Source: Macrostomum lignano (taxonomy: Eukaryota). From it: a stretch of DNA of 64,000 nt. The position numbers and the translations under genes were made by a program. Positions 9,202-60,796 of the stretch are shown piece by piece (position 1 is the first letter of the stretch; the number at the start of each line of letters is the position of its first letter). Location: assembly GCA_002269645.1 (NCBI GenBank), contig NIVC01000382.1, positions 124,001 to 188,000 of the forward strand, written 5' to 3'. A model generated the notes under the pieces. That model did no database searches and had not been told where the DNA came from. It worked only from the letters and a program-made list of their open reading frames with translations.

Positions 9202-9227
9202 ATATTATATAAATTTTATCCTATAAA

Positions 9228-12200: not shown

Positions 12201-12852
12201 CGGCACAATTAGGAATATTTATCTTAGCTCATTCAAGAAGGATCATGAATAATTTTATAACCTCTATAGACGGTTCAAAAACTCCAGAAATTTATTACGG
12301 TGATACGGATTTGTTAAATATACATAAAAAACATTGGGATACATTAAATAAAAACGGACATGTCGGAAATAATTTAAGTCAAGGAAAAAACGATTATGGA
12401 GAGGGTGGAATTATATTCGGTTATTTTATCGCTCCTAAAATTAAATATTGTCTTTTATTGAAAGACGATTTTATTTTGGAAGAGAAAAAAAAACATTTAA
12501 AGGATGTGCAAATGATAAGATTAATTTTGCATCGTTTAAAACTTTATATGATGGACAGTCAATAAAAGTAAATAATAATGCCCCATGGAAACGATCGTTT
12601 GAAGGCGGGATAATAATCCCCCAAAGCGGATCAACAATATCAAAAACATATACGTCTACGATAAACACATTTAAAAGAGAAAAACCGGATAAAAACGGAG
12701 TTATGAAACCATTCTTTAAAAACTATTTTGATGACAAACCACAACACGAACATTCAATTGAATATTATAACAGTTTACTATTTGATGTTGACTATAACTG
12801 TTTTGAGTTTGATATTGATGAACTAGCACTTATAAAAAACCAAAGCATGTAA
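9228..12852 (+). pseudogene. polB: Protein-primed family B DNA polymerase with N-terminal coiled coil and OTU-like domain, split by 3 frameshifts
   Basis: OTU-like IPSDGNCFY...IGHYCL; ExoI IFDFETY; ExoII AHNSSRFD; ExoIII YLQFDL; Pol A DGVSLYPSAM; Pol B KTLLNSLYGK; Pol C YGDTDL (S>L). Spread over ORFs 9228-10097, 10054-12171, 12107-12565 and 12448-12852. Confidence 0.92.
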
Positions 12853-21700: not shown

Positions 21701-24700
21701 CCTGGGGCGGCACAGACTGAGTGCCGAGTTCCTGACCAACATTCGGAGTTACAACTCGGCGCTGCACCTGACATCGCTGGGTGCCAAACTGCGGTTGGTG
21801 CCAGGCTGGTGTCCCAGCTTCATCATCAGCGGCCAGTTGCATCACAACACGGCGCCGCTATTTGCAGAGGATTCAGCTGAGCCCCATGGCTGGCAGGTGT
21901 ATTTCAATGATCGCGAACTTGAAAGCCGCCAGAGTCTCAGCCAGAAGGTGAAGCCGGAGCTACTGGAGCTATTGCAGACGCTGCTTCACGAGTGCAACGG
22001 CTATGTCCGCAGCCTGAGGGCAGTCGCTCATCGAATCAGTCAAGATCCGGAGTTGGGAGATGCGCGAATCGTGATTCACCCTGACCGTCGACCATCTGGG
22101 GAACACATTCGGTATGTCTGCAAGACATTCTAATAAGATATTTTGCGTAATAACTTATCCAATTATCCAATTTGTACAGACTCTGTATCCCACAAACTCC
22201 GTTCAAAATCAGGCGCTACAACTTGCCTACGGCGAACGAGGTCGGTATCCTGATTGTGGAGGACAATGAGAACACACCGGCCAGTCGGGACGTCGTGATT
22301 CAACTGCGTGGTGGCGGTTCCCAGAGAATCAGCGAGACGCACCGCTCATATGACCCGCTGGAGTATGTGCTGCTGTTCCCGAATGGCGAAGATGGCTGGC
22401 ACCCGGAGTTGCTGATGAGTAATGGCAAGAAATTGACGCCCATGAAATACTATGCGAGCGAAATCATGGTGCGAGCGGGCCAGTTCAGTGTGCTGCACTA
22501 TGGCCGAAGATTATTTCAGCAGTACTTGGTGGACATGTGTGCCAAGATTGAGGCAGAGAGGCTGCTGTATTTGCGGACCCATCAGCAGGACCTGCGCAGC
22601 GAGACATACAGCGGTCTGCGGGACGCTTTGTTTGCGGCTGATGGCAGGTCTACCGACAGAGATCCGAGTGACATAGGCAAGCCCGCGCATGTGCTTCTGT
22701 CTTCGAGCTTCGTTGGCGGGCCAAGGTACCTGATGGAGAGGCTACAGGACGCTATGACCTATATTCACAAGTTCGGTAAGCCGGACCTGTTTGTCACCGC
22801 AACGTGCAATCCAAAATGGCCGGAGATCAGCGCTCAGCTGCTGCCTGGACAGCGGGCAGAAGACCGGCCGGACATTGTTAGCCGAGTCTTTGAAATGAAG
22901 AAGAAAGCTCTTCTGGCCCAGTTGACCAAGCGCTATGGGAAAGAGGCCGCTCACGTTTGCTCACTGGAGTACCAGAAGCGTGGTGAGTAAAAATTCTGAC
23001 TTGCAAGAATCAAAGTTTTAAGATTTATTAAAATTTAGATTTACAAAGGTTTTGTGATATTTTTTAATACTTTTTTGACGCTCCAGGTCTTCTCCATGTG
23101 CACTTTCTGCTGTGGCTCGTGAGCGGTCAGCGAGTGACTCCGGACCGATACGATGACATCGTGTCTGCCGAGATTCCGGACCCAGAGCAGCAGCCTGTGC
23201 TGTATGAGCTGGTGAAGACGCACATGATCCATGGCCCCTGCGGCAAGGAGAATCCGGCGTGTCCTTGCATGGAGAATTGCGAATGCAGCAAGGGCTTTCC
23301 GAAAGAGTTCCAGCAGGTGACGCTGACCAGCGATACTGGCTACCCACTGTACCGCAGACTGTCGCCTGAGATGGGCGGATTTACAGTGGACAAACTGTTC
23401 AAAGGCCGGAGCATTTGCATGGACAACAGGGAAGTTCAAACGCTAATATATTGCTTAGTTGTGCATTGCAGCTTTTGTTTCTGAAAGTTAAAGATATTAT
23501 TTTTTCATTAAAACAGGTGGGTCGTTCCGTACAGCCCTGACCTGTTACTCCAGTTTGCGTGCCACTTGAACGTCGAAGTTTGCGCCACTGTAAAGTCGGT
23601 CAAGTACGTGATCAAGTACCTGTTAAAGGGTGGCGACATGGCGACGTTCAAAGTCGATGCCAATAGGAATTCTACTGAACCGAGAGAGCAGGCAGTGGGT
23701 GACCAGCAGCCGACGCAAACGACAGGAAATAAGCCGCGTGATGAGATTAAGGAGTACCTGTCCGCGCGCTACATTGGTCCAATGGAAGCCGTGAATACTA
23801 TCTTGGGCTTTGAAGTAATTCGCATTCTAATTATTATTGGCTCATTTTAACCAGAGCTGTGAAACCTCGTCATAGTATAAATTGAATTTCCATCGAAACT
23901 TAAAGGCTGTATATTTTCCTTTCACTTTCTGATCAGGTGCACAACAGGTTTCCGGCGGTCATCCGACTCTGCGTTCACAAGTCGGAAGAGCAGCTCGTGT
24001 ATTTCAACGAGGGGACCGCAAGAGCAAAAGCGAGAACGCCGAAGTATTCGACGTTGACGGCATTTTTCAAGCTGTGCCGTATTGACGAATTTGCTGGGTC
24101 CTTGCTCTACACGGAGGTGCCGTCCTACTTCGTGTGGCACTCCAGCGAAAGAGAGTGGCGGCGGGCCAAGCAGGGTGTGCGAGTCGATGGCCATCCGGGT
24201 GTAGTGCGGAACAAAAACGTTGCACGCATGTACACGGTGAGTCCAAGAGCAGGTGATTTATTTTATGTTCGAATGCTCCTTTTGAATGTTAGGGGACCGA
24301 CTAGCTTCGAGGCGCTGCAGACCGTGGACGGCGTTGTGCATCCGAGCGCCAAGGCTGCTTGCATGGCCCTTGGCCTGCTGCAGCGAGATGATCACTGGCG
24401 GCGGTGTCTAGCTGAGGCCGTTCAGTCAAGAATGCCAAGAGCCCTGAGACATCTTCTGGCCGTAATTCTCATATGGGGTGAGCCTGAGGATGGCAGCGAC
24501 CTCTGGTGCAGTTTTGCCGAGTATCTCAGCGAGGACCTGCGGTTTCACCACCGAGACTTGAGCACCGAGGAGATTACTGACCTGGCGCTGCGTGAGCTTC
24601 AGAGCATGCTGATCTCCATGGGCGGGAGAAGCCTGCCAGAGTACGGCCTGCCTGCGGCCTCCGTGACACCTCAAGATGGACCAATGCAGTTTGATACGGT

Positions 24701-26371
24701 TGAGCAAGCACTGATTACTGAGGCGCGCTTACCAATGCTGACAGATGAGCAGAAAGCGGTGTACGAGTCCGTGACTCAGAATCTTGTGGACGGCACCAGC
24801 GGCTTGCACTTCCTGGACGCACCTGCTGGCACTGGCAAGACCTTCCTGCTAGAGGTTCTGCTAGCCTTCGTGCGCAGCCGGGGTGAAGTCGCCCTCGCCG
24901 TTGCGGCTTCTGGAATCGCAGCGACTCTTTTGCCAGGTGGACAGACGGCGCATTCAACGTGAGTAATTTATTGTCAATATTTCAAAAAGCAGTTGTAAAT
25001 ATTTCGTGTGCTGTAAATATGTTCGGCATGGTGAAACTATTTGTCTATGCCAGGTTCAAGATACCAATTCGGGCGATCCGTTCGAGCAAAGACGTGTGCG
25101 CTGTTGGAGCGCAGTCCAAACAGGCCGCTGTATTTCGGACAGTGCGTCTAATTGTCTGGGACGAGATTTCTATGACAAACCGGAAGGATTTGGAGGCCGT
25201 CGACCGGTGCTTGCGAGACGTGCGGAAGCAGGACGTGCCATTCGGCGAAGTGGTTTTCGTTTGCGCTGGGGACTTTCGCCAGCTGCTGCCCGTTTTGGTG
25301 CATGGGACTCGAGCCAACAGCGTCATGGCGTGTGTCAGCAGATCCCCACTGTGGAAATTTTTCCGGCGGCATCGCCTTACAAGAAACATCCGATTGCTGA
25401 GCAGTTCCGATTCTGCAACGTATTTGAGATACACCGAGCTACTCAAGCAGGTAAGTTTGTTTTCATCAGTTTATTAATTAGAAGACTTAAGGATATTCGG
25501 TTTCTTTCGTGTTGAGAGCTCCATTTTTTTAAATTGTGGCTTATTCAAGAATGCCTAGCTCAAAGTCTGTCTAGCGTTTTAAATATTTGCCCTTTAACTC
25601 CCCCAGATCGGATCCGGAAAAATTGAGCAGGATGCAGAGGAGAAAGTGTCTCTTCCTGCTGAGATCATCATTTCTGCGGAGGCGCCGCTCAATGATCTGA
25701 TAAATTTTGTGTACCCATCGTTTGAGGCGTCAGTGGAGAGGGACGGCTACTTTGCAAGCCGAGCGATCCTGGCGCCGTACAATGACTCAGTGGATGCCAT
25801 CAACGAGACGTGCCTGGGCATGTTCCCCGGCAGCCTGCGGGAGTACCGCTCAATAGACAGTGTGGCCGATGAGGATGCCGCTACGCACTTCCCGCCTGAG
25901 TTGCTCAACCAGCTGGATGCCCCGAACTTTCCGATTCACTTGCTGAGGCTAAAAGTGGGTATGCCAGTAGTTCTTCTCAGGAACATCAACCCGCCACGAT
26001 TGTGCAATGGTACGCGGCTCATCATACTCGCAATGGGCGAGAACGTGCTTAGATGCAAAATTGCCGCCGGCCAGTTCACGGGAGACGAGATTCTTCTGCC
26101 GCGAATCCCGCTGATTCCTAGCAATGCGGACCTCCCCGTCAGTTTTAAGCGGCTGCAGTTCCCTGTGAAGCCGAGTTTATGCCTGACGATTCACAAGTCG
26201 CAGGGACAGTCTCTGGACACAGTTGGCATTGACCTGTCAGTCGGTTGCTTCACGCATGGCCAGCTGTACACGGCGCTGTCACGAGCAAAGAACGCGGCAA
26301 ATGTTCGCGTCCGGATTCCGGGAACAAGGACCAGAAACGTTGTGTTTCCAGAAGTTCTCACTGAAGACTAA
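18729..26371 (+). mobile_element. Autonomous-type Helitron (element B); 3' end not located, so it extends at least to 26371
   Basis: Head TCCTATATACTAAAAATGAG directly follows the CTAG of element A; contains the Rep-helicase gene. Confidence 0.85.
20015..26371 (+). CDS. Helitron Rep-helicase (about 1752 aa, 9 exons): ETxxQREERL repeats, OTU, Zn finger, HUH Rep, PIF1-like SF1 helicase
   Basis: Exons 20015-20562, 20848-21378, 21527-22111, 22213-22982, 23087-23429, 23517-23814, 23937-24958, 25054-25450 and 25607-26371 join in frame (5259 nt). Motifs: GDGNCFF/HYESL, EYQKRG-LLHVH, YVIKY, DAPAGTGKT, WDEISM, GDFRQLLPV, TIHKSQGQSL, HGQLYTALSR. The intron-5 donor reads GG instead of GT. Confidence 0.93.
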
Positions 26372-27479
26372 TTTATTTATCGTAAAAAATGAGGGGTGAG
26401 CAATAATTTTCCTTATGCAAAAGGCTAGAAAGTATATTCATTTATTTTTAAGGAAAAATAGAATAATTATTTCCCCATATCTCTAAAGTGGTAGTTCTCA
26501 TTCCTAAAAGAATCGCAGGAAACTTATTGCCCCAACCTCATTTCTAACGAAGCGTAGATATTGCAATGGCAGTGAGTACGAGCTAATAGCTGATGAACTT
26601 AATGTTGAAGCTCAATTAGGCTTATTTTATTCATTGTATTAATTTTTACAGTCATTTTACAGTTAATTTGTATTTTAAGGCAATTTCATATTAGCCGAAA
26701 GTAACTTTTGAAACAAACCTTCTTTTGCACTGCTTTGAATGAATTAAGTCTTTGATGAGCAGTTAATTTGTCTTTTATTTTTCACCTGAAATTTCATTAT
26801 AATTCGAATACTAACTTTACCTATTTTATATCGCAAATTTATGCAAAAGACGAAACAATTTTGTTTTTAGTTTTCCAAGGTGTGCAAAAACTTAACATTT
26901 AGAGTGAATTTTTACGCAAACTACGATTGACAGTCTTTTTCAAAAATCCAAAATATCTCAAGTCACCTGTAATAACTGTGGACTGTAAGCTCATAAAAAA
27001 CGATTTGCATCAACTTGCGACGGGGCCTTCGTCTTCCATATATTGAAAGTTGAATAATATACGAAACTCGCAAGATGTCAATTTTAACTAAGGCGAAGGC
27101 CCTGAATGAAGCTTTTGTCTTACTTCATTTCTTAATCTTTGGCGAAACAATAAATACGAATAGACTGAGGCAAAGCGCAAAGGCTAAGGAAATAGAGCCG
27201 AACAGAAAATCTTAGCGCGAAAGAAAGAGACCAACAAACATATGAGATCGAGAGATCTAACTTAAAATTAGAGTTAGATGGGATTATTGCTGAGAAAATA
27301 TTTTTGCAAAAGCTGAGTCAAGGAGTAATGCAAAATTGCAGAAAATGAAAATTGCAAACTTCAGAAAGGTCAAAGGATTCATTTAAGGCGCCGCCGTGGA
27401 ATTTATGGTGGGGGAGACAAAGCCAAAAATTCTACATGTGCATTCCTACATTATTTTGAGAATCGGTTTTTTCAGCGCT

Positions 27480-28340
27480 TATTTTGGCGTAGCCGGCATT
27501 CATCCCAGCGCCACAAACGCCACACATTTTAGCACCGCAAGCACTCATTTTGGCGTCGCCGGCAGACACTCATTTTGGCACCGCAGACACTCATTTTTGT
27601 ACCACAGAAACTCATTTTGGCACCGCAGACACTCATTTTGGTACCACAGAAACTCATTTTGGCACCGCAGACACTCGTTTTGGCGCCGCAGGCAGACACT
27701 TATTTTGGCACCGCAGGCGGACACTCATTTTGGCACCACAGAAACTCATGTTGGCACCGCAGACACTCGTTTTGGCGCCGCAGGCAGACACTTATTTTGG
27801 CACCGCAGGCGGACACTCATTTTGGCACCACAGAAACTCATGTTGGCACCGCAGACACTCGTTTTGGCGCCGCAGGCAGACACTTATTTTGGCGCCTCAG
27901 ACACTCATTTTTGCACCGCAGGCACTCATTTTAGCGCCGCAGGCACTCATTTTAGCGCCGCAGGCACTCATTTTAGCGCCGCAGGCACTCATTTAGGCGC
28001 CGCAGGCACTCATTTTAGCGCCGCAGGCACTCATTTTAGCGCCGCAGGCACTCATTTAGGCGCCGCAGGCACTCATTTTAGCGCCGCAGGCACTCATTTT
28101 GGCGCTGGCACTCATTTTAGCGCCGCAGGCACTCATTTTAGCGCCGCAGGCACTCATTTTGGCGCTGGTACTCATTTTAGCGCCGCAGGCACTCATTTTA
28201 GCGCTGCAGGCACTCATTTAGGCGCCGCAGGCACTCATTTTAGCGCCGCAGGCACTCATTTTGGCGCTGGCACTCATTTTAGCGCCGCAGGCACTCGTTT
28301 AAGCGCTGGCACTACTTGTAGCGCCGCAGAAACTCATTTT
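27480..28340. repeat. Minisatellite built on a 21-bp unit GCAGGCACTCATTTTAGCGCC, with longer composite units in its 5' half
   Basis: Direct reading of the tandem array. Confidence 0.9.
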
Positions 28341-29814
28341 GGTCCCACACGTACTTAGTTTTCATTATTAATGCGGCAGAATTGCAGGCACTATATTTTT
28401 TGCCGAAGGAATACTATTGATTTCAATATTGGGTCACACGGTTGGGTGGTGAGGCCGTATAGCTTTTACTAGGGAAAGATGTCCCCTCTGTTGGCGACGC
28501 CCTGGATTCACAGCGAAAGCAGAGTAAATGATGATTGCAAAGCTGAGAAAGAGTTCTTGAACTGGCTGAGAAACGACAACAATAGGGAGAACCAAGAAAA
28601 AGCGAAAGTGCAAACGAAAGAGAGCCAAACTAAAAATCTGAGCGAGAAGGAGAGACGAACGGAAAATTTCCTTGAGAAAGTGAGCTTTACTGTTACATGA
28701 TTTGCATAATATTACAATATTATAGTGGCTGCTTGAATATTGTTTAACTATTAAATTGGTAAATCAATAAATTACTGTACTCATTTATTACTAAACAACA
28801 CTAACTTTCGTTTTATTCTTTCCCCTACGCTCAGCGGTTCTTACTCGTTCATTTATCTTTTTGAATTAATAAGAAGTTTCAATGCATCGTATTTCATTCG
28901 AAATTTAAAACTTGCTCTTTTTAGTATTACTTATTATTTTATTATCTAAATATTATACTGCTAAAGCCTGGATCTTAAAAATTATCTTCTTCTACTATAA
29001 ACCTTTGTCCGACTGTTTAACAACAGTTGAAAAATAAAGACAAAGACAAATATTCAGAGCCTACGCCTTGGGTAAAAGTTTTCCCGGAAATCATTTTTAT
29101 TTATCGAATTTAAGACGTAGGCTCCGTCGCAAATTGATGCAAATAAAAATATTCAAACTTGTCAAACTGCTAGCGAATTTTGCGTGATTATTACTTATTA
29201 CTACTGTAAGTAAAAAAGGTGATATTATTCAAGCCCTTCTACAGTTACAAATTTAAAATGGATTTTTAGATCTTAAATATATATTTAGTTGCATTTTGAG
29301 GCATAAATTTGCGAAAGTTAAAAGACAACAGCACAGAAATGAGGTTGAGTAAAAAATGTTCTGATTAATATCTGTTCGAATTCAGTTTAAAGAAATTCAA
29401 AATTTGCGAAAGTTAAAAGACAACAGCACAGAAAAAGAGGTTGAGGAAAAATTTTTCTGATTGATATCTGTTCGAATTCAGTTTGAAGAAATTCAAAAAG
29501 AAAAAATTAGTCTTCATCTTCTGCTGGTGATGTCAAAAATTCTTGATTTCGAGTGCTCGAGTCACCAGTGTACGGAGTTCTAGGTGTAGAGCCTGTGGGT
29601 ACCTGCTGATTCTAGCTGTTCTGCTGAGACATGTCACTTGTGTACAGAGGCCTAGATGTAGAGCCTGTGGGCATCTGCTGATTCCAGCTGTTCGAATCTC
29701 GTGAAAATGTTACATGTGAAGTGGGATTCGGTTTGAAAAGTATATAATTATAACTGTCTTTGATTAAATTGAAGTGAACACTCATAAGAAGTATACAATA
29801 ATAACTGTCTTTGA

Positions 29815-31129
29815 TTAAACTAAAGTGAACACACATTTTCGAAATAAACTAACCTCTCTGCTTCCGAAACGCAGTCTTATTCTTCGCATGTTGTTAAACT
29901 GGTGAAACATTCGTTCGGGGTAGTGTAATGTCATTTCTTCATCATGTGATGCTTGCTGCTCAGGTGGTGGAATCTGTGTAGCTCGCACAGCCTCGAAATG
30001 CTGCTGGCTAGCTGTGGCGCCGTTGTACCACTCGGTTAGGTCGGAGAACTCTTGCGAATTTTCTGGCCAGTGATGCACTTCTGCTTGCGAACAGCCGAGG
30101 CTTATCATCTGGGCGTACTCTTGGACTTGAGAGCCATGAATCGCGAGAATGTCGCCGATAGACCAATTATTCACCTGCGCAGAAGAACTGGCCCAAAAAG
30201 TGCAGGACACAGAGGACCCGGACCGATCAACGATGGTAACTTTTGCTAAATCGACGAGCTTTCCGGCACCAGTTTTTACTTCCTTTGGCTTCTCAACTGC
30301 AGAAATGATGCCACGAACGTCAACTTTCCTGTCGTACGGTGAAAGTTTTTGAGTAGGGCAAATTTAGCTGAATGACTAGCAATCAGCGCCCCCCGTCTGG
30401 CAGCCAAAAAATGCATTACAAGTTTTTTAATAAACTACATGTAGCGTCTCTTTGCAATACCTCAGCAGTCCCTTGTAAGCCTTGGCATGTTAGCAATTCC
30501 CCCCACAAGCCTTAGCATATCAATTTCCCCCCTTGACATCTCATCGATGCCCCCCTCCCGATTAAGCCTTGAAATCTTAAAAAATCGGTCAAGCTTTTAA
30601 CCCTAACCTCAGCCTAACTCTAACCGTAACCCTAAAGTAAAGCAAAGCACGAGGAAATGTATAAAAGAAAATAAAGGCACAAAGTGCAAGATATTTACGT
30701 TTTCATTTGGCATGCAGAAATTTCCGATATCCTCCTGTAGTCCCGGGGACGCCTGTTGACCGTCTCGTTTGAAGTCATGATGGTGCCGCTTTTGTCAACT
30801 GAGACGCTCATCTCATACTCGTTTTCCGTAGTGTTGTACCTTGGGTCAGCCTTTTTGATCCAGCCTCCAGAAATGCGCACTGTCTCGACCGTTTGGCACA
30901 TTTCCAGCAATGACTTCAGGTCCTTGCCAAAAACGCTCACTCTGATGTCTGCAGTCTCGTCAGTCAAAGTGAAGGAGAACACTTGGCCTGATCCAGCTTT
31001 GTTGTTCTCGTAGGCGTGGATTTTTGTCAGTCTCGTTATCAGACCAACGACCGGTGAATCCATCAAGCCGGGCAGAAGAGCAGAGATGCCGAATTTTACC
31101 TTCTGGGCTGGCGTAGGGTTTGATTCCAT
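29815..31129 (-). CDS. RPA70 (RPA1)-like ssDNA-binding protein with two OB folds, spliced, possibly defective
   Basis: 30695-31129: GSGQVFSFTLTDETADIRVSVF...IKKADPRYN..NEYE (DBD-A-like). About 30350-29815: KVDVRGII...VTIVDRSGSSVSCTFW...LTEWY (DBD-B-like). The acceptor of the second exon is not clean. Confidence 0.8.
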
Positions 31130-32054
31130 TTCTCTTCGTTACTTAAAGAATCTAAGTTAAAAGTAGATAAAAGTGATGCTTGACTTGAAACAGTTGAGGC
31201 GAAAAGTTTACTGCATTTACAGTTTGTTTTTATTATATATTGCAGCCCTGCAGCCACCCCTTCGTCCCAAAACAACTCTCAATATTTTCTCGCTGCCGTC
31301 TGATTGGTCAGCATCTCGACTTTCTGTTATAGCCTTTTTCTTACCGTCCACTCTATTCTATTTTTTAGTCACCCCTGTTTGTAAATTTTAGCCACCTTTA
31401 TAATTTTGGTGGCCTCTGATTGGTCCGCTGGTTTAGGCTGGGGTCGATTGGGGGCTGCAGTCAGCGCCAACCCCTCCGCTGGGTCGAACTGGATCGCCGA
31501 GACTTTTTTCATGCAATTACTTTATTTGGGCTGTTTACGCGTGCCGCAGAAAGTTATTGATTTTTTGGACTACAAGAACAAATACTAACAGATATAATAA
31601 CAAATACTTTTGTTATTTTTTACAAAACAAAACTGAAACTTACACTTAAACTTAAAAGTGCATTTTGTAGCTAAATTTTCACGACAGAGGTAGAGAGACA
31701 CCAGATAAAATCAATAATGAGGTGAATAAAGTATGATGTCTCACCCTCATTGTCCACTGAAAACAAAATACGAGCTATAGGCTTATTAGGCTGGGCTGGG
31801 GAGTTAGCTGATTGGTTAGAAATAACTCAGAAATCAAAAGCCGACAGGGTGAGCCAATCATTGCTAGAGATAACAAGAGATTTGGGGGTGAAAAAACAGC
31901 AAATTTGGGGTGGTGGATCAGCCAGCCATTATCTGGTTTTGGCCACTGTACACTATAGTATATATAACCAACTCTGTTCTTAACAATTTCACTATACGCC
32001 CGAACAAAATAAAAAATAAGTTTAAAAGCCCACGCCAGTCTTTTTTCCAGTACT
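31130..32054. promoter_or_regulatory. Putative bidirectional promoter between the RPA-like gene and the zinc-knuckle gene
   Basis: CCAAT boxes at 31301-31307, 31417-31423, 31809-31815 (TGATTGG) and 31854-31858; TATATATAA at about 31959-31967. Confidence 0.45.
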
Positions 32055-33842
32055 ATGAATCCGTACCTAAGTAATCCCTACCTAAGTTATCCCAATCCCT
32101 ATCCGTATCCCTATCCCTATCCATTTCCTGGTGTATTTTACCCCCCCCCCCATCTACTGGGATGCCCTATCCCAACCCATACCCACCCCCCATTCTCCCA
32201 CCGGCACCCTGGCCGATGCAGCAACAGCAGCAACAGCAAGAGGAGCAGCAACAACAACAGCAACAACAACAACTGCAACAACAACAACAGCAACAACAAC
32301 AACCGCAACAGCAACAGCAACAGCACCACCCCCATTGAAGCGGTGTACGTGGAGACTAATATCGAGCCGATCCGTTATCAAGCGCGCAAAAGGGCGATGC
32401 TGGCCTGGGAAAAGGCCACCAGAGCCCCAGAGGGAGACCCGCTCAGGGAGTGTAGTGAAAGAACCGGAAACCGCAGACTTCAGGCGAACAAAGGGTGGAG
32501 GGATCAGGCCAGAGAGGAATGCCTGAGGAGGTCGACCCACCCCAGAGAGGGCTTCACCAGAAAGAGACACCCGCCGTGGAGACGGCTACATATGGACGGC
32601 GTCGTGATCGCTACGGAGCTTATTCGCGGAGGAAAGAAGGGTGACAGCAACCTCGCCACAGAGACGATCGACACCATTAACGCCTGGGGCAAATTCGATT
32701 TGTCAATCTACACGGATGGGTCTGTTGGAGAAGGGCAGCGTAAGGGTGGTGCAGCTTGTGCCGTGTACTTTGACACGGAGAGACGCGTCAAGAAAGCGGC
32801 GGCCGGGGAGTGGTGCAGCTCCCTGGTTGCGGAGGAGCGAGCCCTGGAGCTGGCACTGGATACCATTGCGGAGGCCAAGCCGCGAAATGCCATCATCCTG
32901 ACGGACTGTAAATCGGCCCTCCTCAAGCTCAGCAGCGAGAAAGCTACCCAGGATACCACGTCGTACCGCCTGATCAGTAGACTCCGTGAGATTAGCCAAG
33001 TTACCAGAGTGGTGCTGCAGTGGGTACCCGGTCATGTTGGTGTCGCGGGCAACGAGGATGTCGACCAGGAGGCTAAGGAAGCAGCGGCTCTACCGCAGGA
33101 CGACGTCCCCGTCATGTGGAACTGTGTAAAGGCGGCCATCAGGAAGGAGCCGGCGCCCCCGCCCTCTGATGAGCGTCTCCGTAGGGTCTACAAGCACAAA
33201 ATTAACAAATGCGCTGAAAATCGTAGCACGGAGACCACACTCGCCCAACTCAGATGTGGTCAATGCAAGAAGACGGCCTACTGGCGACAAAAAATCGGTG
33301 CTGAGGCAAAGGCGAGTTGTCAGGACTGCGGTGAGGAAGAGGACAAGGACCACTGGGTGTGGTGCGACAGGTGGCATAAGGAGAGGGCGCGTTTTGGTAT
33401 TCAAGGTCTGGAGGATCTGGGAGATGAAGCGAAGGTGCTAGGGTTCCTGAAGTGCACGCACCCTGAGTGGGTGCAATGAGGGAACCCGCCCAGCCGAAGA
33501 CACACACAGCAACAGCAGCAGCATCAACTGCAGCTACACTCGCGCTCGGCGAGAACTCGATTTGTGAGAGACGAAATGCGCGCACGTAAGTTAATTGTAT
33601 TACGAGTTTGTTTAGAGGGGTAGTTTTGACTAAATCAGTTTTCGTTTGACCACTCATTTCGTGTGAAGTGAATATACGTCAAAACTAACATTGACAAATC
33701 TAATCGCTTTCTTTTCACAGTTGGACTATGCAGATTCTGCCTGCGGCGCGGCCACATTGCGGCAGAGTGCAGAGACCTACCTCGCCGCCGCAGCCGCAGC
33801 CGCAGCCGCAGCCGCAGCCGCAGCACCGTCGTTGAAGAATGA
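32055..33842 (+). pseudogene. Spliced Pro/Tyr-rich - polyQ - CCHC zinc knuckle - RS-tail gene interrupted by a LINE
   Basis: Joining the donor at 33585/33586 (GTAAGT) to the acceptor at 33720/33721 (branch CTAAC, TTTCTTTTCACAG) gives RDEMRALGLCRFCLRRGHIAAECRDLPRR(RS)6TVVEE*. The upstream polyQ frame is one base off the ATG at a C11 run (32141-32151). Confidence 0.7.
32326..33505 (+). mobile_element. 5'-truncated non-LTR retrotransposon (I-group-like): RNase H and C-terminal Cys motif
   Basis: IYTDGS, AEERAL, TDCKSAL, QWVPGHVGVAGNEDVD, CQDCGEEEDKDHWVWC; stop at 33479. Candidate TSD ACAGCAACAGCA at 32314-32325 and 33506-33517 lies within the CAG/CAA tract. Confidence 0.9.
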
Positions 33843-34140
33843 ATCATTTTTTTAATTTCTGTGCTGTTAACTATTTGACTATTTGTATTTTGACTATTTA
33901 TAACTATTTGTGCTGTTAACTAGGTTAAGTATTTGATTAAGTAAAAAATTGATTAAAAAATAAATAAAAATTTGAGTAAGTGATTAAGTAAGTTAAACTA
34001 CGACTAAAATGCTGAGTTAGAAGCACCAGGCAAATTTAAGTAAAGTAGCTAATCATTTTTGCTGCAAAGAGGCTCTTTGTCTTATCATAAATCCGTTTTT
34101 ATAACGAGTCTTTTGGTTTTTTTTGGTTCGTCAAACAAAA

Positions 34141-34210
34141 GGAGCCACAATGTCATACATTAAAGAGCCACCATGTCGTACATAAAACAGCCACCGCGTC
34201 AAACATAAAC
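34141..34210 (+). repeat. Three degenerate units of the 23-bp Helitron-associated satellite
   Basis: GAGCCACAATGTCATACATTAAAGAGCCACCATGTCG... is the reverse complement of the 54.7-63.6 kb satellite. Confidence 0.75.
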
Positions 34211-35178: not shown

Positions 35179-38100
35179 TTAAATTAGACGCAGTCGCGTG
35201 TCAAATCTGCGGCAATACTCTGCGATCACATCCTCGTAATCTAGCTTAATATCTTTGTGCACGGCGAGCATTGCCAGACCATTCAGCCTTCCTTCCGTCA
35301 TCGTCGATCGCATGTAATTCTTAAGACGACGCAAGAGACTGAAGCTTCTTTCCGCTGTGCAGGTTGTCACCGGAGTGGTAAAAAAAGTCTGAGTAGCTTA
35401 GAGACATTTGACCACACGGAGGCATTGCATCGCCGAATCGCCTCATCAATAGTCATTGCAGCTCGATCAGCTGGTGATATATCACGGCAAAACTCACGCC
35501 AGCCTTCAAATTCTGCCTCGAATGCTGCCCGGCTGTCCAGAAATGCGCAATATTCCTCATAAGCTTCGCCAGCAGCCACTATGGAGTCTTCTTCGAGGCA
35601 ATGAGCCGGTAGCAGAGCTTCGCCATCCGCATCGCGATCTTGGATGATTTTGAGAAGCGCTCGCGAATCTCTCGGATAACTAAATCAAGGGTTGGGTACC
35701 ACATGTTTATCTTGTAGACTTCACGGGTATCTTTCCCCGGTGCGTTACTTTTGTGCTGGCTGCGGCTGGATGATCTTGCACGATACTTGTCGGGTACGTT
35801 CTCGCCGTCATGGTGCTTCTTATGCAGCTCCTCAGCAGCGTTAAATACCTCATTGAATTTAACATCCTCGGCGTCACTGCGCCAAGCCACCAGTCGACGG
35901 AGAACTCGATCAGCTTCCTCACTCGCTGTGACTAGATCCATCGCTGTCGACTGTGAAGGAAAATATAAAAGATCACAGATATTTTTGACAAGTTTAAGTA
36001 AAATACTGAGTAATCAATTTGCTAGAAATTGATCACTCTCTGCCTCAATATCAGCGCACTTTAAGAATTGAGATTCTTACCTGAAGCGCAACAGAAAGCC
36101 CATGCATCACTCCTAGTACTGCTTGTAGCACGTGAAGGGCAACAATTGTCATCGAATTAGTCATTGCATTGTAGACTAATTGATCAGCATCGATGAAGTA
36201 CTGGGCAGAAACATCGAAAAGTGTTACGAAGTCGAAAATGTTCGTTAAACTCTCAACAAACCGCGTTGGACAGATTGATTTCAGCCGAGTCTTGAGCCGA
36301 TGATCTTTGCCCTCGGCATTTATGCTGGCAGTTACCTTAGCAAACTTCTGCGTTCTCACAGCTGAATGCGCAAAGTGCTTTGAAGCAGCATCGATAGTTG
36401 CGTAAGCCGCCTTCAGTTCTCGAATACCGTGCTTGCTGTCAATGACCGCTCTTGTGCACAGATAAAGGCAATGGCTGAAGCAGTGGATGTAAACAGCATT
36501 AGGGCAGTTTTCTCGGATCCGGCCTTGCACAACACGTTCAGCACTCATCACTGATGCTCCGTCGAAACCCTGAGCAATGAGAAAATCCTTTTGAAGCTGG
36601 AGTGCTTCTAGTCTCTTGTCGATTGCGTCAACAATTGCGGCAGCATCTTGCTCTTTGAGATCGATAAAGCCCAAGAAGCGCTCTTCAACATCGCAATTAT
36701 CTGTCACAAAACGGATATTCACAGAAAGTTGTTCGACTCGTGAAACATCGCTAGTTCCATCCACGATAGTTGCATAGAATGAGTTAACTGGGCGAATGAT
36801 CTGGCGCGTAATCATTGCCTCGATGCAATCGATAATCCTGTTCTGCACAGTCGGAGACAAGCCTGTCGAGTTCAAAGGACTATTGCGCAGTAAGTCGGCC
36901 AATTTTTTGTCCTTTACAGCATCTCTTTGAAGCAACGCGCGAAGATTACCTTGCGAGAAGTCAACTGATTCGATAGCCTCTGGCACTTGAAGCCGTCCTG
37001 GCGCTTCTCTATGACCGCGAAGGGCTTGATTGGTGCGCCCGAGATATTCAATGGCACTTATCACTGTTTAAAAAATGTAGCGGCGCTCCTGCAAAGCTGC
37101 ATCAGCTGCTGTACTCAGCTGCGCTGAGACGTCACCTGTAGACGACTGCTTTTGCACTTGACTGAAAGAGTCGCAGGCTTGACTGTGGTAAAGCGACAAG
37201 CGATGCTTGTTGTAAATTTCCAGTATTTTTTTAAAATTCGTCACCGGAATTGTCACCAGCCGACCTAAATCTTGGTTGTTACGGTTACCGCAGCCTTTAT
37301 CCGGAGCAAAGAGAACGCAAGACAGACAGAATACCCCCTTTCTTTTGGGTGAGTATACGAAGCAGCTATTCTTACCGCTGATGTGATGGTGAAGCAGCTT
37401 GTAATTTTGCTTTTTCCCAACTGAGTGTGGAAGCTGGTAGTCAGGGCCTACCTTCAGCGTGTCCTTCATAAAGCGCAGACGGTCTTCAGCTGTCAACCTT
37501 CCATCAATGCGCATCTACACAGCATCCCCGATATCTAACCTTGCAGCTGAATCCGAAGGTGGAGGAATAGCTACTGCATCTGCTTGGTTGCTTTGTAGTC
37601 CAGAATCAGCCTCCACAGTGCTTGCAGAAATTGAAATGTCAATGTCATTGGCTTCATTCGACGGAGACGGAGTCACAGCTTGCCGCTGTAGCTGAAAGAG
37701 GCGATCAAGCTTCTGCTGTTTTGCGAGAGGCGGTCCAGGCGGATCCATAGTTTCGTTGCAGTTTGTTACAAACTGTTACAAAACAGCAGTTTGTGCGCCG
37801 AAACCGAAAGTCAAGCCCTTCTCTCCCTGTAAATCCCTGAAAATCTCTCCCTGTCCCGCTTTCTATTGGCTATTTTCAGCCCTGGCTCTCCCTTTCAGAC
37901 ACGCCTGTTCCAATGTGCACACTGGCCACTGCCTAAGTGCCTATCCCCCTGTCCCCTGACATCCAACCCTTATTTGTTGCCCTTCCCCTCTCCTCTCGTC
38001 CTGGGGCCTGGGGGTTGAGCTCCAATGTACATTACATTGTACATTAGGCCCTTCATTCCTGTCCCCGATAGTGATAGTGAGCCTAGCCTACACACCACAC

Positions 38101-42015: not shown

Positions 42016-45000
42016 TGTTGATTCTGAAGGCACAGACACTATAACACCAATTTTGATGTAGCCTATAGCTAACTCGGTAATTTCTTAAGTGCTCCAGTTG
42101 AGCAGCTCTCACTATCACTTTTATTTATTGTGGCCTTAGAACGAGGCACCGCTCATTCAAGTTGTACTGTAATGCTAGTGGCGGTCATGCCATAGATAAA
42201 AGTCTATATCAAATTAATACATCTAACACTCCTTCCCGATAGTTTCTGCAACTGTCCGAGTTCACTCCAGTTCACGCGCAATCCGGGCTTCCTAAAGTTG
42301 AGTAGTTCAATCTGTCGGGTGCCTTCCGCGTGCGCTGGCAGCGATGACCTCTTTCAGGTTGTCCAGGCTCTTCCGTCGGGTTACTTGTGTTCTGGTCAGC
42401 AACACCTTGCTGTGACCTCTCCTGAGGCTCGCTAGTTTCAACGGGAATCCTTGGTTTTGTCTGCTCCAGATGATATCGGCTGTGTTTTCCGTCTTCCAAT
42501 TGTACGCCCACAATTTTCTTACCTTCTCTAGCAACGATTTCACCGGGCTTCCATTTCTCGGTTTCGTTCCTGTAGGTCTTTACCCACACCGGTTCTTTGG
42601 CCAAGGTCAACGTTGCCGTCCGAAGCAGATGTCCTCGCATTAACTCTGCAGGTGCCCTTCCTGTCGTGGAGTGACGGGAGTTCCTGTACTGTAGAAGAAA
42701 GCGGTCGACACTGGTTTGTAGATCGTCTTCGCCTCCTGATGCCGCCACATGGTTCTTCAGGTCTCTCACAAACCTTTCGGCAAGGCCGTTTGATCGTGGG
42801 TGGTACGGAGGCGTGAGCACGTGTCTGCATCCGTTTCCTTTGAGCCAGCCCTCCATCTCCACTGAAGTGAATTGTGGACCATTGTCAGTAACCAATGTTG
42901 CGGGAACACCTTCTTGCGAGAACGTTCTTCGGAAACGTCGGATAGTCTCTGCCGATGTGGTTGACTGCGTAACATGTACTTCTGCCCATTTGCTGTAGGC
43001 ATCGACTATTACGAGCAGGTACTTGTTGCCCTTAAACGGTCCAGCGTAGTCTGCGTGCACACGGCACCACTTTTCGCTTTCCTCTGGCCAAGATGCCCAT
43101 TGGATTGTTGCTCCATGGTCTTTATTTGTCTGGCAAGCGACGCATTGCTTGGTATGCCTAGTGACATCAGCGTCTATTCCTGGCCACCATACGCATTGTC
43201 TGGCGATGGATTTCATCTTGTCCGCGCCTATGTGGCCGTCGTGCAATAGTTGAAGAACTCTTTGTCGCTCCTCCTGCGGGATCAGCAGGCGTATTCCTCT
43301 GTAAAGAAGACCGTTCTCGATCACCAGTTCGTCACGAGTTCGAGCGTATGTTGGTAGCTCCTTGATTCCTTGGGCTGTCCAGCCATGCTTGACGAGCGCA
43401 AACAGCCGTCGCATCTCCTGATCAAGCATTGAAGTGCGCCTAAGCCGCTGCTTGTCAACTGGTATATCGAGTAGACTGTCCTGAATCGAGTTGACGTCGA
43501 ATTGCTCGCTCTCCGCGGCACTATTATTCAATCGAGATAGGGCATCGGCGACAGGGATCTCCTCGGAACGCTTACACTCGATGACGTAATCATACTCCAT
43601 GAGTGTGATTGCCCATCGCTGTAGCCTAGCAGCAGCAACCGTAGACAAGGCCTTTCCAGGGTTGAACAAAAATTTCAGTGGGTGATGGTCCGTCCTGAGC
43701 ACGAACTTGCGTCCTAGCAGATATTTGTGGAGGCGTTTCACGGCCCAGACTATGGCTAGCGCCTTTCTTTCGATCTGTGCATAATTTCTCTCAGCCTGTG
43801 TCAACGTCTTGGAGATAAATAGAACAGGACCGGACGACTGCTCCAACACGGCTCCCAGTCCCACCGGTGATGCATCAGTCGTAAGTATAATATTGTCAGC
43901 TGGATCGAATGACTTTAGAAGTCCGGCGTTGAGCAATCTTTCCTTGATTGTGTTAAAGGCCTTCTGTTCTTGCCTTCCCCAGGTCCATCGCACACCTGAC
44001 CTGGTTAGATTGGTCAATGACTCTTTCAACGTAGCCAAGTTAGGAATGCATCGTCCATAGAAATCGACCATTCCCAAGAACGCCTGTAGTTGTTTGAGGT
44101 CGCTTGGATCTTTTAATCCGGCAATGGCTTCCACTTTCTCCTTTAGAGGGCGAATTCCATCAGCACTGATCTCGTAGCCCAAAAATCGTATTGACGACTT
44201 GTTTAGTACAGACTTGTCAGCATTTATGCGAAGTCCATTGTTTTCCAGGATCTTCATTACAGTGTTGAGCCTTTTGTCATGATCAGTCTGACCTTGGCCC
44301 AAGATGAGGATATCGTCCTGGTAGGATATCACGCCGTCGAGGTTTAGCAGGAGTTTATCCATATGTGACTGGAAGATAGCGGGTGCTTGTTTTACCCCAA
44401 AAGCCAGTGCGGTTGGACGAAACAGGCCGAAGGGTGTGCTCCAAGTTTGCATCTGACTTGTCTCGGCGTCGACTGATACCTGCAAGTATGCGTTTGTGAG
44501 ATCTAGCGTGGAGAATTTCCGGGCTCGACCCAATCTGGACATCACTTCATCAATTGATGGCGTCGTCGACACCATGTCTTCCAAGACTGGGTTCAGTGTT
44601 ATCTTATAGTCGCCACAAATCCTGATACTACCAGATTGCTTTCTGACACACACTATAGGCGTGGCCCATTCGCTTGATTGCACTTTCTCTAACTGTCCTT
44701 CAGATTCCATTCTTCGTAGCTCGTTCTTTACGTCTTCTTGAATACCATAGGGAATCGGTCTTGGCTTGCAGAAAACAGGTTTTGCGCCTGGCCTGATCGA
44801 TAGTGACACCTTCACGGTGTCGACTGGAGACATGCGACTTGATTGCCGTTCTTCAGTAGTGTCAGCATTACCACCTTGGGTTATGGCGACATAAAGCTCC
44901 GGCTCCAGCTCTGCAATCCAGTCCAAACCATATATGGGCTCCACATCTCTGTGGTCAACGACAAACAATGGCAGGTTTGCTACTGCGCCGCCACGCTCTA

Positions 45001-51900: not shown

Positions 51901-52975
51901 ACTATGACTAATGGGGTCGAGTACTGCGAGTAACTAGGCCTAATGATGCCTCTAGCCAACATGAGATCTAACTGCTCATTTACCTCCTTGATCCAATGAG
52001 GTGGAATTTTCCTAGCTGGTATCTGAACTGGGTTGTTATCCTTCAAGATAATTTCATATGTGACTAAATGCGTTCTGCCTAAGTCTAACTCGTGCTGCAA
52101 GAAAGCTGCTGAATGTTCCTTGACGACCTCGATCACCTTCTGTCTCTGCTCCTGTGTCAGTTCATTTTCTATGTTGATTTCACTAATCCAGACTTCTGAC
52201 TTCTCTTGCACTTGTCTGATGTTTTCGCACAACTGCGTGTTCCTATTCTGGCATGACTGCTCTTTCTCTGGTTGATCTTTAAGATAGCTTAATTCGCTAG
52301 CTAACAGTGGCTTAGCCATTCCTACTAGTGCTGATGCGGGCACTCTAGCTTACTGTGAACTGGTGTTAATCACTTCTAGGTAAGCTTCCCCTTGTCTCAA
52401 AGTTACTAAACTTGGCACTAAAGTTACTTTCTCTGTTCTAGTCTTTAATCCTGATCTGAGTGGCTCAACAACTGACGGCACTCCGAAATTGGACTCACTA
52501 CCTGTGGCTAATCTAACTTTGACTAATCCTGAAGTATTAGCTGGAACTGTCGTCTTTTCTGCAACATAGATTCTCTTAACCTGAGGCTTAGCTCTGGTAG
52601 AACGAAGTGGAATCCTAGTTCCCTGCTTCATAGTTAGCATTCCTGCCTCAAAGTCGATAGCATTGCAATATTGTTGGACAAACGTCACGCCTACTACATT
52701 GTCTACTTCTGCGTCACATAAGAGAAACTCTATTTCTTCTTCAAAATCACCGAATGTTGCCTTAATAACTACGGAACCTTTAATTGGAATCAGCTCTTCC
52801 GTGAATGACACGATTCTATTGTTCCACTGCTTAATTGAGTGACTATTCATGCCAGTGAACAAATGTTTCCAAGTTTCACGTCCTAGAATGTTCCTATTGC
52901 TTCCAGTGTCTAATAGATAAACCACCTCCTTATTTAGAATGCTGCCAGTAATATACGGATCGTAATTTTGTTTTT
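48906..52975 (-). pseudogene. pol: Decayed Ty3/Gypsy pol (PR-RT-RH-IN), no gag or LTRs seen
   Basis: YLLDTGS; RT with a deletion between DLFSGY and YEVLSMGL; YLDDVIVY; DIDASD; integrase IDLIGP, HPQSNGLVE. Several frameshifts and stops. Confidence 0.92.
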
Positions 52976-54650: not shown

Positions 54651-54729
54651 ATAAGTAGCTAGTGCGACAATTTCCTTAGCATTATAGTGGCTCCTTTAAA
54701 ATTCGCTTACTTTTACGTTTGAAACTGTG

Positions 54730-59260: not shown

Positions 59261-59311
59261 TTTATGTTTAGCAGTTTTTGGTTTTTAAGGTGTTTTAAAA
59301 AAAATCATTTT

Positions 59312-59374
59312 GCGCTACCAAGATTCGAACCCAGGTCGCTACATTAGCAGTCCAGTCTGTTCGCATCTAGGCTA
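59312..59374 (-). ncRNA. tRNA-derived (Ser-GCT-like loop) Pol III/SINE-head-like cassette, not a functional tRNA
   Basis: TAGCCTAGATG (A-box-like), GGACTGCTAAT, GGGTTCGAATC (B box); no acceptor stem. Confidence 0.55.
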
Positions 59375-60790: not shown

Positions 60791-60796
60791 GGCGAC

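What the first reader, a model, noticed from the sequence alone, without database searches (positions are those of the whole stretch)
32055..33842. Hidden spliced polyQ - CCHC knuckle - RS-domain gene missed by the ORF track
Seen: removing the LINE (32326-33505), shifting one base in the C11 run at 32141-32151 and splicing 33586-33720 gives MNPY...YPNPYPPPILPPAPWPM-polyQ-HSRSARTRFVRDEMRALGLCRFCLRRGHIAAECRDLPRR(RS)6TVVEE. Established: CX2CX4HX4C knuckles bind RNA or ssDNA, and RS tails typify splicing regulators. Inference: a small RNA-binding protein with prion-like and RS low-complexity domains, possibly transposon cargo. I do not recognise it as a known gene.
Basis: partly seen in the sequence, partly recalled or inferred. 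Interest (0 to 1): 0.7.

Follow-up and report, generated by a model that had tools for sequence, protein, structure and literature searches.

The report
Broken orphan zinc-knuckle gene, LINE-interrupted

Summary

For a gene relic:
- GC content steps exactly at the predicted exon borders.
- The intron has a perfect GTAAGT donor, branch-like CTAAC and CTAAT motifs, and a pyrimidine tract ending in CAG.
- The CX2CX3GHX4C knuckle is about 40 times rarer than chance.
- TATA-like and AATAAA motifs flank the model.

Against, or limiting:
- Three of the four "domains" are coding microsatellites that stay open in several frames.
- Pfam zf-CCHC scores below its threshold.
- No homologue of the non-repeat core turned up in about 5.8 billion protein clusters, and the knuckle exon matched only generic multi-knuckle proteins in 1.84 billion representatives.
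- The copy is disrupted twice.
- It fails the definition of an SR protein: no RRM, and an RS run of 14 residues.

New point: the insert belongs to a LINE lineage whose members all end in a (CAA)n(CAG)n tail. This explains why it landed in the window's only CAA/CAG tract. The right-hand "polyQ" codons are probably LINE tail, and frame restoration on removing the LINE is weaker evidence than it looked.

Helitron cargo could not be tested. Verdict: a plausible orphan pseudogene of modest interest.

The parts
31959..31964 (+). TATA-like motif (TATATA), about 90 bp upstream of the ATG. A possible core promoter element, but weak evidence.
   Evidence: Pattern scan and direct reading of the sequence.
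32055..32140 (+). Exon 1, first segment in frame A: ATG then P/Y-rich repeats, MNPYLSNPYLSYPNPYPYPYPYPFPGVFY.
   Evidence: It is the only frame open here. Repeat units vary mostly at third codon positions.
32141..32151 (+). C11 homopolymer where the reading frame slips. +1 C or -2 C is needed to join the two P/Y-rich readings. This is either a real frameshift or a homopolymer assembly error.
32152..32217 (+). Exon 1, second segment in frame B: STGMPYPNPYPPPILPPAPWP. An alternative in-frame ATG lies at 32162.
32216..32325 (+). CAA/CAG tract coding M(Q)7EE(Q)9L(Q)9P(Q)6 in frame B. It is the only CAR microsatellite in the 64-kb window and the target of the LINE.
32326..33505 (+). 5'-truncated non-LTR retrotransposon (LINE) fragment. 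It carries the end of ORF2 with the RNase H domain and a Cys-rich C-terminus (open to the TGA at 33477-33479), then a 26-nt 3' UTR. The intact ORF suggests a young insertion. It places a stop in the gene's frame at 32336-32338.
   Evidence: Pfam RNase_H E 4.8e-14. 37% identity to RT+RNase H protein P0001 up to the homologous stop.
33506..33533 (+). Short CAR stretch (CAG CAA CAG CAG CAG CAT CAA CTG CAG) of ambiguous origin: LINE (CAA)n(CAG)n tail, target-site duplication, or remnant of the gene's polyQ tract. Its first 12 nt, ACAGCAACAGCA, exactly repeat 32314-32325.
   Evidence: Relatives L001, L002, L003, L005 and L013 all have a 15-27 nt UTR followed by a 15-36 nt CAA/CAG tail.
33534..33585 (+). 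End of exon 1: a unique basic linker, LHSRSARTRFVRDEMRA, in phase with the Q reading of the CAR tract.
33586..33720 (+). Predicted 135-nt intron: GTAAGT donor, ACTAAC and CTAAT branch-like motifs, TTTCTTTTCACAG acceptor. GC is 0.33, against 0.56 and 0.66 in the flanking exons.
   Evidence: GTAAGT occurs only 13 times on the + strand of the window.
33721..33842 (+). Exon 2. It holds the CCHC knuckle CRFCLRRGHIAAEC (33729-33770), the RRRS(RS)5 run encoded by a perfect (CGCAGC)6 (33783-33824), then TVVEE and the TGA stop (33840-33842).
33952..33964 (+). ATTAAA and AATAAA polyadenylation-signal motifs about 110-120 nt after the stop codon. Weak evidence.

Best explanation
The locus is the relic, or a disrupted allele, of a small lineage-restricted two-exon protein-coding gene.

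Its ancestral product was about 145-160 aa. It had a Pro/Tyr-rich N-terminus, a Gln-rich tract, a short basic linker, one CCHC zinc knuckle and a short Arg-Ser run. A protein of this kind would most likely bind single-stranded nucleic acid through the knuckle and basic tail, with low-complexity regions that promote self-association. That functional step is inferred from motif class only.

In this copy the gene is dead. A LINE with an RNase H domain and a (CAA)n(CAG)n 3' tail inserted into the gene's CAA/CAG tract by target-primed reverse transcription. Insertion was probably guided by annealing of the tail to the tract. The LINE puts a stop codon in the gene's frame 11 nt after the junction. 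The C11 run additionally shifts the frame, unless that is an assembly error.

Shown:
- The anatomy of the gene model.
- The identity of the LINE and the tail property of its lineage.
- The significance of the knuckle motif.
- The lack of homologues.

Inferred:
- That the model was ever transcribed, spliced and translated.
- Nucleic-acid binding.
- Tail-guided insertion.
For: - The reconstruction is reproduced exactly.
- GC content steps coincide with the ATG, both splice sites and the stop: 0.36 / 0.51-0.56 / 0.33 / 0.66 / 0.30.
- The donor is a perfect GTAAGT, one of 13 on this strand in 64 kb. The acceptor is pyrimidine-rich and ends in CAG, 6 nt before the knuckle ORF's first Cys. The splice is in phase.
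- The knuckle motif with G before H occurs 2 times against 0.025 expected per window.
- phmmer of exon 2 against 1.84 billion representatives returns 39 hits at E <= 1e-3; the ten sequences read are CCHC-knuckle proteins.
- The same P/Y-rich repeat is read on both sides of the C run, in frames one base apart. Pro, Tyr and Asn codons vary at third positions.
- The LINE fragment is open for 383 codons and ends at the homologous stop, so the disruption is recent and the flanks have had little time to decay.
- Six members of the LINE lineage at 31-41% identity share a short UTR plus a CAA/CAG tail.
- The insert sits in the only CAR tract of the window.
- (CAA)n 3' repeats of LINE families are described in the literature (PMC3747384, Table 3).
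Against: - No relative of the non-repeat core was found. One search found no candidate sharing three 5-mers among 5.8 billion clusters. One search found nothing at E <= 10. The metagenome scan found nothing.
- There is no paralogue in the window.
- The P/Y, polyQ and RS parts are microsatellite-encoded (TATCCC, CAR, CGCAGC). They stay open in two or three frames, so ORF length means little.
- Only about 40 residues are of normal complexity.
- Pfam zf-CCHC scores 14.8 bits against a cutoff of 20.8.
- The model needs two edits to be read.
- In-phase restoration after LINE removal is expected for a CAR-tailed LINE in a CAR tract whether or not the tract is coding.
- The locus lies in TE- and satellite-rich DNA with no recognisable host gene nearby.
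- No expression data were available.
Confidence: 0.5

Rival explanations
1. It is not a gene. On this reading it is a patchwork of GC-rich microsatellites (TATCCC, CAR, CGCAGC) that happen to stay open, next to an isolated zinc-knuckle remnant of an old retroelement gag or nucleocapsid. The 'intron' is then just AT-rich spacer with fortuitous splice-like motifs.
For: - The region is saturated with transposable elements: Polinton, Helitron, hAT, Gypsy and LINE.
- The other CX2CX3GHX4C motif in the window belongs to the Gypsy gag.
- Exon 2 is open in all three forward frames and on the antisense strand.
- Three of the four 'domains' are simple repeats.
- There are no homologues.
- Several of the best phmmer hits look gag-like, for example P0008 and P0014.
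Against: - No gag or capsid domain and no protease or RT follows or precedes in phase.
- There are no LTRs or TIRs.
- GC content steps exactly at the predicted splice sites.
- The donor is a perfect GTAAGT, the acceptor is strong and the splice is in phase.
- An ATG sits at the start of the P/Y repeat, with an upstream stop and with TATA and poly(A) motifs.
- A joint occurrence of all these by chance is improbable.
Confidence: 0.22
2. It is transposon cargo. The unit would be a gene, or a captured gene fragment, carried inside the neighbouring Helitron, next to and divergent from the RPA-like gene at 30695-31129 (minus strand). It would then be multi-copy in the genome rather than a single host gene.
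For: - An RPA-like OB-fold ORF lies 0.9 kb upstream on the opposite strand (Pfam tRNA_anti-codon OB fold E 1.8e-6, MEIOB_N E 0.0023).
- Helitron Rep and PIF1 helicase ORFs lie at 20-26.4 kb.
- Helitrons are known to capture host gene fragments (general knowledge).
Against: - No Helitron 3' terminus (GC-rich hairpin followed by CTRR) was found between 26 and 40 kb, so inclusion in the element is unproven.
- There is no second copy in the window.
- No related sequence was found in any collection.
Confidence: 0.15
3. The sequence is correct as assembled, and the product is the 474-aa chimeric ORF (32055-33479). This would fuse the P/Y-rich N-terminus and a Ser/Asn-rich reading of the CAR tract to the LINE RNase H and C-terminal domain.
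For: The ORF is continuous from the ATG at 32055 to the TGA at 33477-33479, and it contains an intact RNase H domain.
Against: - The in-frame fusion has a one-in-three chance of arising by accident.
- The P/Y repeat continues in a different frame after the C run.
- The exact product is not on record anywhere.
- The LINE part aligns with ordinary ORF2 C-termini and ends with the LINE's own stop, UTR and tail.
Confidence: 0.03

Closest known systems
SRSF7 (9G8) and plant RSZ/RS2Z splicing factors (RRM + CCHC knuckle + RS domain)
   Same: A CCHC zinc knuckle is followed directly by Arg-Ser dipeptide repeats.
   Different: There is no RRM. The RS run is 14 residues rather than at least 50 (definition in PMC9456285). 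No sequence similarity exists beyond the knuckle motif. The N-terminus is P/Y- and Q-rich instead.
Small single-knuckle nuclear proteins of Pfam zf-CCHC_3 (PF13917; the SREK1IP1/ZCCHC10 type, recalled from memory)
   Same: A protein of about 150 aa with one knuckle and a basic tail. zf-CCHC_3 is the top Pfam match.
   Different: The match is far below threshold: 15.2 bits against 27, E 0.02. No homologue was retrieved.
Retroelement Gag nucleocapsid knuckles and multi-knuckle CNBP-like proteins
   Same: The CX2CX3GHX4C motif is shared. These are the only proteins that phmmer finds with exon 2, and the locus lies among retroelements.
   Different: There is a single knuckle, no capsid domain, no pol and no LTR. 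A predicted intron lies immediately upstream of the knuckle.
LINE families with microsatellite 3' tails such as (CAA)n or (TAA)n, and microsatellite-targeting LINEs (this row concerns the insert)
   Same: ORF2 with an RNase H domain, a short 3' UTR, then a (CAA)n(CAG)n tail in six divergent members. The insertion lies inside a matching microsatellite. (CAA)n 3' repeats are listed for LINE families in PMC3747384.
   Different: The clade was not assigned here. Strict target specificity is not shown, since the relatives' 3' flanks after the tail are unrelated unique sequence.

Membership tests
CCHC zinc knuckle (Pfam PF00098 zf-CCHC) | Cys-X2-Cys-X4-His-X4-Cys spacing, usually with Gly before His | tested here: met
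   CRFCLRRGHIAAEC at 33729-33770. The motif with GH occurs 2 times against 0.025 expected in simulated sequence.
CCHC zinc knuckle (Pfam PF00098 zf-CCHC) | Score at or above Pfam's gathering threshold | tested here: not met
   14.8 bits against 20.8, E 0.031. zf-CCHC_3 scores 15.2 against 27. No hit at E <= 0.1 when the whole 157-aa protein is scanned.
CCHC zinc knuckle (Pfam PF00098 zf-CCHC) | Sequence similarity to bona fide knuckle proteins | tested here: met
   phmmer of exon 2 against 1.84 billion representatives gives 39 hits at E <= 1e-3, best 5.8e-9; the ten sequences read are multi-knuckle proteins.
CCHC zinc knuckle (Pfam PF00098 zf-CCHC) | Zinc coordination and binding of single-stranded nucleic acid | not testable with these tools
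   Needs purified protein.
SR proteins (SRSF, Manley-Krainer definition) | One or two N-terminal RRMs (PF00076) | tested here: not met
   No RRM hit in the reconstructed protein. Definition as quoted in PMC9456285.
SR proteins (SRSF, Manley-Krainer definition) | RS domain of at least 50 aa with more than 40% RS content | tested here: not met
   RRRSRSRSRSRSRS is 14 aa (33783-33824), encoded by a perfect (CGCAGC)6 (97% matches by TRF).
Retroelement Gag / LINE ORF1 | Capsid/gag domain (or ORF1 coiled-coil/RRM) upstream of the knuckle, and pol or ORF2 downstream in the same element | tested here: not met
   No gag-type Pfam hit. Downstream is AT-rich non-coding DNA and satellite. There are no LTRs. 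The LINE piece upstream is a separate insertion with its own stop, UTR and tail.
Helitron cargo | Position between the Helitron 5' TC end and the 3' hairpin-CTRR end | tested here: inconclusive
   No candidate 3' terminus was found between 26 and 40 kb by hairpin+CTRR and inverted-repeat scans. The element's limits are unknown.
Helitron cargo | Recurrence at the same position in other copies of the element | not testable with these tools
   The source genome is absent from the collections.
Functional protein-coding gene | Uninterrupted reading frame | tested here: not met
   The LINE introduces a stop at 32336-32338 in frame B. The C11 run shifts the frame.
Functional protein-coding gene | Conserved homologues | tested here: not met
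   None in 5.8 billion clusters or in JGI metagenomes. Caveat: the source genome itself is not represented.
Functional protein-coding gene | Spliced transcript | not testable with these tools
   No expression data were available.
Non-LTR retrotransposon with RNase H (the insert) | Homology to the ORF2 RT-RNase H C-terminal region | tested here: met
   Pfam RNase_H E 4.8e-14. 37% identity over 100% of the query to RT+RNase H protein P0001. 57 related metagenome loci.
Non-LTR retrotransposon with RNase H (the insert) | Characteristic 3' tail | tested here: met
   A (CAA)n(CAG)n tail lies 15-27 nt after the stop in the window copy and in L001, L002, L003, L005 and L013.
Non-LTR retrotransposon with RNase H (the insert) | Target-site duplication | tested here: inconclusive
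   An exact 12-nt repeat, ACAGCAACAGCA, flanks the insert. It lies within a microsatellite and could be tail or chance.

The most novel reading that the evidence does not exclude
A lineage-specific, recently born small RNA-binding protein gene assembled almost wholly from three coding microsatellites (P/Y, polyQ, RS) around one knuckle. The knuckle may have been co-opted from a retroelement nucleocapsid. The gene would be carried and amplified as Helitron cargo, and the family would be recurrently hit by a LINE lineage whose CAA/CAG tail homes to polyQ-coding tracts.
Probability: 0.1. Interest if true: 0.5.

Novelty: new member of a known kind. Interest (0 to 1): 0.2.

Why it matters
If the gene is real, it is one more orphan, low-complexity zinc-knuckle protein. 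It shows how a mechanical ORF track can report a chimeric 474-aa ORF while the underlying gene is only visible after the transposon is removed and the intron spliced.

The more general point concerns the LINE. A lineage with a CAA/CAG tail has a built-in tendency to land in CAA/CAG tracts. These tracts include polyglutamine-coding exons, so such elements could be a recurrent source of polyQ-gene disruption.

Neither point is surprising to a specialist. Nothing here opens a long-standing question.

Tried and rejected
- **Whole reconstructed protein, polyQ masked, against 5.8 billion clusters.** 8000 candidates were collected, which looks like a cap filled by RS and PY words, and none scored E <= 10. 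The search was repeated with only the non-repeat core, and no candidate shared three 5-mers.
- **Spliced core in the exhaustive representative search.** Exon 2 alone was used instead.
- **Metagenome scan for the core.** Nothing was found.
- **Exact look-ups to identify the source genome.** I tried the 474-aa ORF, ten other window ORFs, and first-ATG versions of the Gypsy pol and the Polinton polB. None is on record. The organism stays unknown and intact paralogues could not be sought.
- **An intron instead of a frameshift at the C run.** I considered by eye (no tool run) a donor at 32131 and an acceptor at 32221. I rejected it because it lands in the Ala/Thr phase of the CAR tract and skips the second P/Y segment.
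- **LTRs or TIRs around the locus.** None were found.
- **Helitron 3' end search.** No hairpin followed by CTRR was found near the locus.
- **Bacterial promoter and terminator scan.** Irrelevant for eukaryotic DNA.
- **Literature.** A search for the assembly accession of the LINE relative gave no hit. A search for a knuckle + RS + Q-rich protein returned only SRSF7 and RSZ-type factors.
Full report
**Context**

The window is eukaryotic DNA dominated by mobile elements.
- A Polinton-type family-B DNA polymerase lies at 10054-12171 (+).
- Helitron Rep and PIF1-helicase ORFs lie at 20003-26371 (+).
- An RPA-like OB-fold ORF lies at 30695-31129 (-).
- A hAT-type DUF4371 ORF lies at 36051-37064 (-).
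- An uninterrupted 1312-aa Gypsy pol lies at 42272-46210 (-).
- A large 23-bp satellite lies at about 54.7-63.6 kb.

No recognisable host gene was found among the other long ORFs.

**Check of the observation**

- The ATG at 32055 is the first start after an in-frame stop. It opens MNPYLSNPYLSYPNPYPYPYPYPFPGVFYPPP.
- 32141-32151 is C11.
- Beyond it the same P/Y-rich theme continues one frame over, as STGMPYPNPYPPPILPPAPWPM, and runs into a CAA/CAG tract.
The opposite one-base change does not work.
- As assembled, the frame of the ATG instead reads the CAR tract as Ser/Asn and runs straight into the LINE ORF. This gives the 474-aa chimeric ORF 32055-33479.

**The insert**

32326-33479 is open for 383 codons and carries a Pfam RNase_H domain (E 4.8e-14). 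It aligns at 37% identity over its whole length with the C-terminal half of P0001, a protein with reverse transcriptase and RNase H domains. The alignment ends at the homologous stop codon. The insert is therefore a 5'-truncated and still undecayed non-LTR retrotransposon fragment.

Reading the 3' ends of its relatives changed the interpretation.
- L001, L002, L003, L005 and L013 are 31-41% identical at the protein level and come from different samples.
- Each has a 15-27 nt 3' UTR followed by 15-36 nt of (CAA)n(CAG)n, and then unrelated flank.
- The window copy has the same layout: TGA, 26 nt, then CAG CAA CAG CAG CAG CAT CAA CTG CAG.
- LINE families with (CAA)n 3' repeats are on record (PMC3747384, Table 3).

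Three consequences follow.
1. The CAR codons to the right of the insert (33506-33533) are probably LINE tail, target-site duplication or both. They are probably not the remainder of the gene's polyQ tract, so the LINE likely ends later than 33505.
2. The exact 12-nt repeat ACAGCAACAGCA flanking the insert cannot be told apart from tail or microsatellite identity.
3. The insert sits in the only CAR tract of the 64-kb window. This is what tail-to-target annealing during target-primed reverse transcription would give. Such an insertion keeps the triplet phase automatically, so "the frame is restored when the LINE is removed" is not independent evidence that the tract is coding.

**Is there a gene underneath?**

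Arguments for:
- GC content changes exactly at the model's borders: 0.36 upstream, 0.51 and 0.56 in exon 1, 0.33 in the intron, 0.66 in exon 2 and 0.30 downstream.
- The intron starts with a perfect GTAAGT, which occurs only 13 times on this strand of the window. It contains ACTAAC and CTAAT branch-like motifs and ends TTTCTTTTCACAG. It joins the two exons in phase.
- The knuckle CRFCLRRGHIAAEC has the canonical spacing with Gly-His. That pattern occurs twice in the six frames of the window against 0.025 expected, and the other instance is the Gypsy gag knuckle.
- An exhaustive phmmer of exon 2 against 1.84 billion representatives returns 39 hits at E <= 1e-3 (best 5.8e-9); the ten sequences read are CCHC-knuckle proteins.
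- The P/Y repeat varies chiefly at third codon positions: CCC, CCG, CCA and CCT; TAT and TAC; AAT and AAC. It is readable on both sides of the C run only if the run is shifted.
- A TATA-like motif about 90 bp upstream and AATAAA about 120 nt downstream fit a compact transcription unit. This is weak evidence.

Arguments against:
- The P/Y segment, the polyQ tract and the RS run are encoded by the microsatellites TATCCC, CAR and a perfect (CGCAGC)6.
- These and the GC-rich exon 2 stay open in two or three frames and on the antisense strand. Only about 40 residues are informative.
- Pfam zf-CCHC scores 14.8 bits against a gathering score of 20.8.
- No relative of the core was found. One search gave nothing at E <= 10, although its 8000 candidates look like a cap filled by repeat words. 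One search, using the core only, found no protein sharing three 5-mers. The metagenome scan found nothing, and there is no paralogue in the window.
- This negative result has limited weight. Exact look-ups of twelve window-encoded ORFs failed and the LINE's best relative is only 37% identical, so the source genome appears to be absent from the collections. Intact paralogues in that genome could therefore not be sought.

**Most likely explanation (confidence about 0.5)**

This is the relic, or a disrupted allele, of a small lineage-restricted two-exon gene. Its product combined P/Y-rich and Q-rich low-complexity regions with a basic linker, one zinc knuckle and a short RS run. It was recently inactivated when a CAA/CAG-tailed LINE inserted into its CAA/CAG tract. 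The LINE places a stop at 32336-32338 in the gene's frame. The C11 shift is either a second lesion or a homopolymer assembly error.

Binding of single-stranded nucleic acid is inferred from the motif class only.

**Rivals**
1. A non-gene patchwork of GC-rich microsatellites next to an orphaned retroelement knuckle (0.22). The GC steps at the splice sites, the strong in-phase intron signals, and the absence of any gag or pol domain or LTR argue against it.
2. Helitron cargo (0.15). It is suggested only by the RPA-like neighbour. It could not be tested because no Helitron terminus was found and no other copy is available.
3. The chimeric 474-aa ORF as the true product (0.03).

**Comparison with known families**

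The knuckle-then-RS arrangement recalls SRSF7 (9G8) and plant RSZ/RS2Z factors. The protein nevertheless fails both defining features of SR proteins. It has no RRM, and it has no RS domain of at least 50 residues (definition quoted in PMC9456285).

It is not a Gag or a LINE ORF1 by any tested feature.

It can only be filed as a CCHC-knuckle protein by motif. The spacing and the similarity to knuckle proteins are met, and Pfam's threshold is not. "Prion-like" describes only the Q-rich composition.

**Verdict**

A hidden, broken, orphan knuckle gene is plausible. The hint at a splicing regulator is not supported, and the cargo idea remains untested. The interest is modest.

The most useful by-product is the (CAA)n(CAG)n tail of this LINE lineage and its insertion into a polyQ-type tract.

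Noticed in passing
window 33480-33533; L001 3359-3410; L002 2448-2492; L003, L005, L013: Six divergent members of the inserted LINE's lineage share a 15-27 nt GC-rich 3' UTR followed by a (CAA)n(CAG)n tail. The window copy sits in the only CAA/CAG tract of the window, which suggests tail-guided insertion into polyQ-type microsatellites.
   Followed up: partly
window 32055-33479 (+): As assembled, the gene's ATG frame reads through the CAR tract (as Ser/Asn) and straight into the LINE ORF2 remnant. This gives a 474-aa chimeric ORF with an intact RNase H domain. The fusion is probably accidental, and the exact product is not on record.
   Followed up: partly
window 34130-34209 (+) and about 54700-63600 (-): A 23-bp satellite fills about 9 kb at the right end of the window. 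A 3.5-copy patch of the same repeat, in the opposite orientation, lies 290 bp downstream of the candidate gene's stop.
   Followed up: no
window 27396-28358 (+): A 21-bp tandem array (consensus CCGCAGGCACTCATTTTAGCG, more than 40 units with 92- and 102-bp higher-order periods) keeps a 320-aa ORF open downstream of the Helitron helicase. It has no Pfam hit.
   Followed up: no
window 20003-20566 (+): The first ORF of the Helitron region matches Pfam STPRs repeats (E 2.5e-24), upstream of the PIF1-helicase ORFs.
   Followed up: no
window 42272-46210 (-): An uninterrupted 1312-aa Gypsy-type polyprotein with protease, RT, RNase H and integrase domains, plus a gag knuckle at 45401-45442. It appears to be a young, possibly active copy. 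A second, fragmented Gypsy pol lies at 50195-52925 (-).
   Followed up: no
window 8212-12565 (+): A Polinton/Maverick-like segment with a family-B DNA polymerase (PF03175, E 6.4e-17) preceded by two ORFs of unknown function. One of these has a charged Q/R/E-rich stretch.
   Followed up: no
L013 about 1320-1392: In one metagenomic relative, the LINE's CAA/CAG tail is followed directly by CCCTAA-type telomere-like repeats.
   Followed up: no
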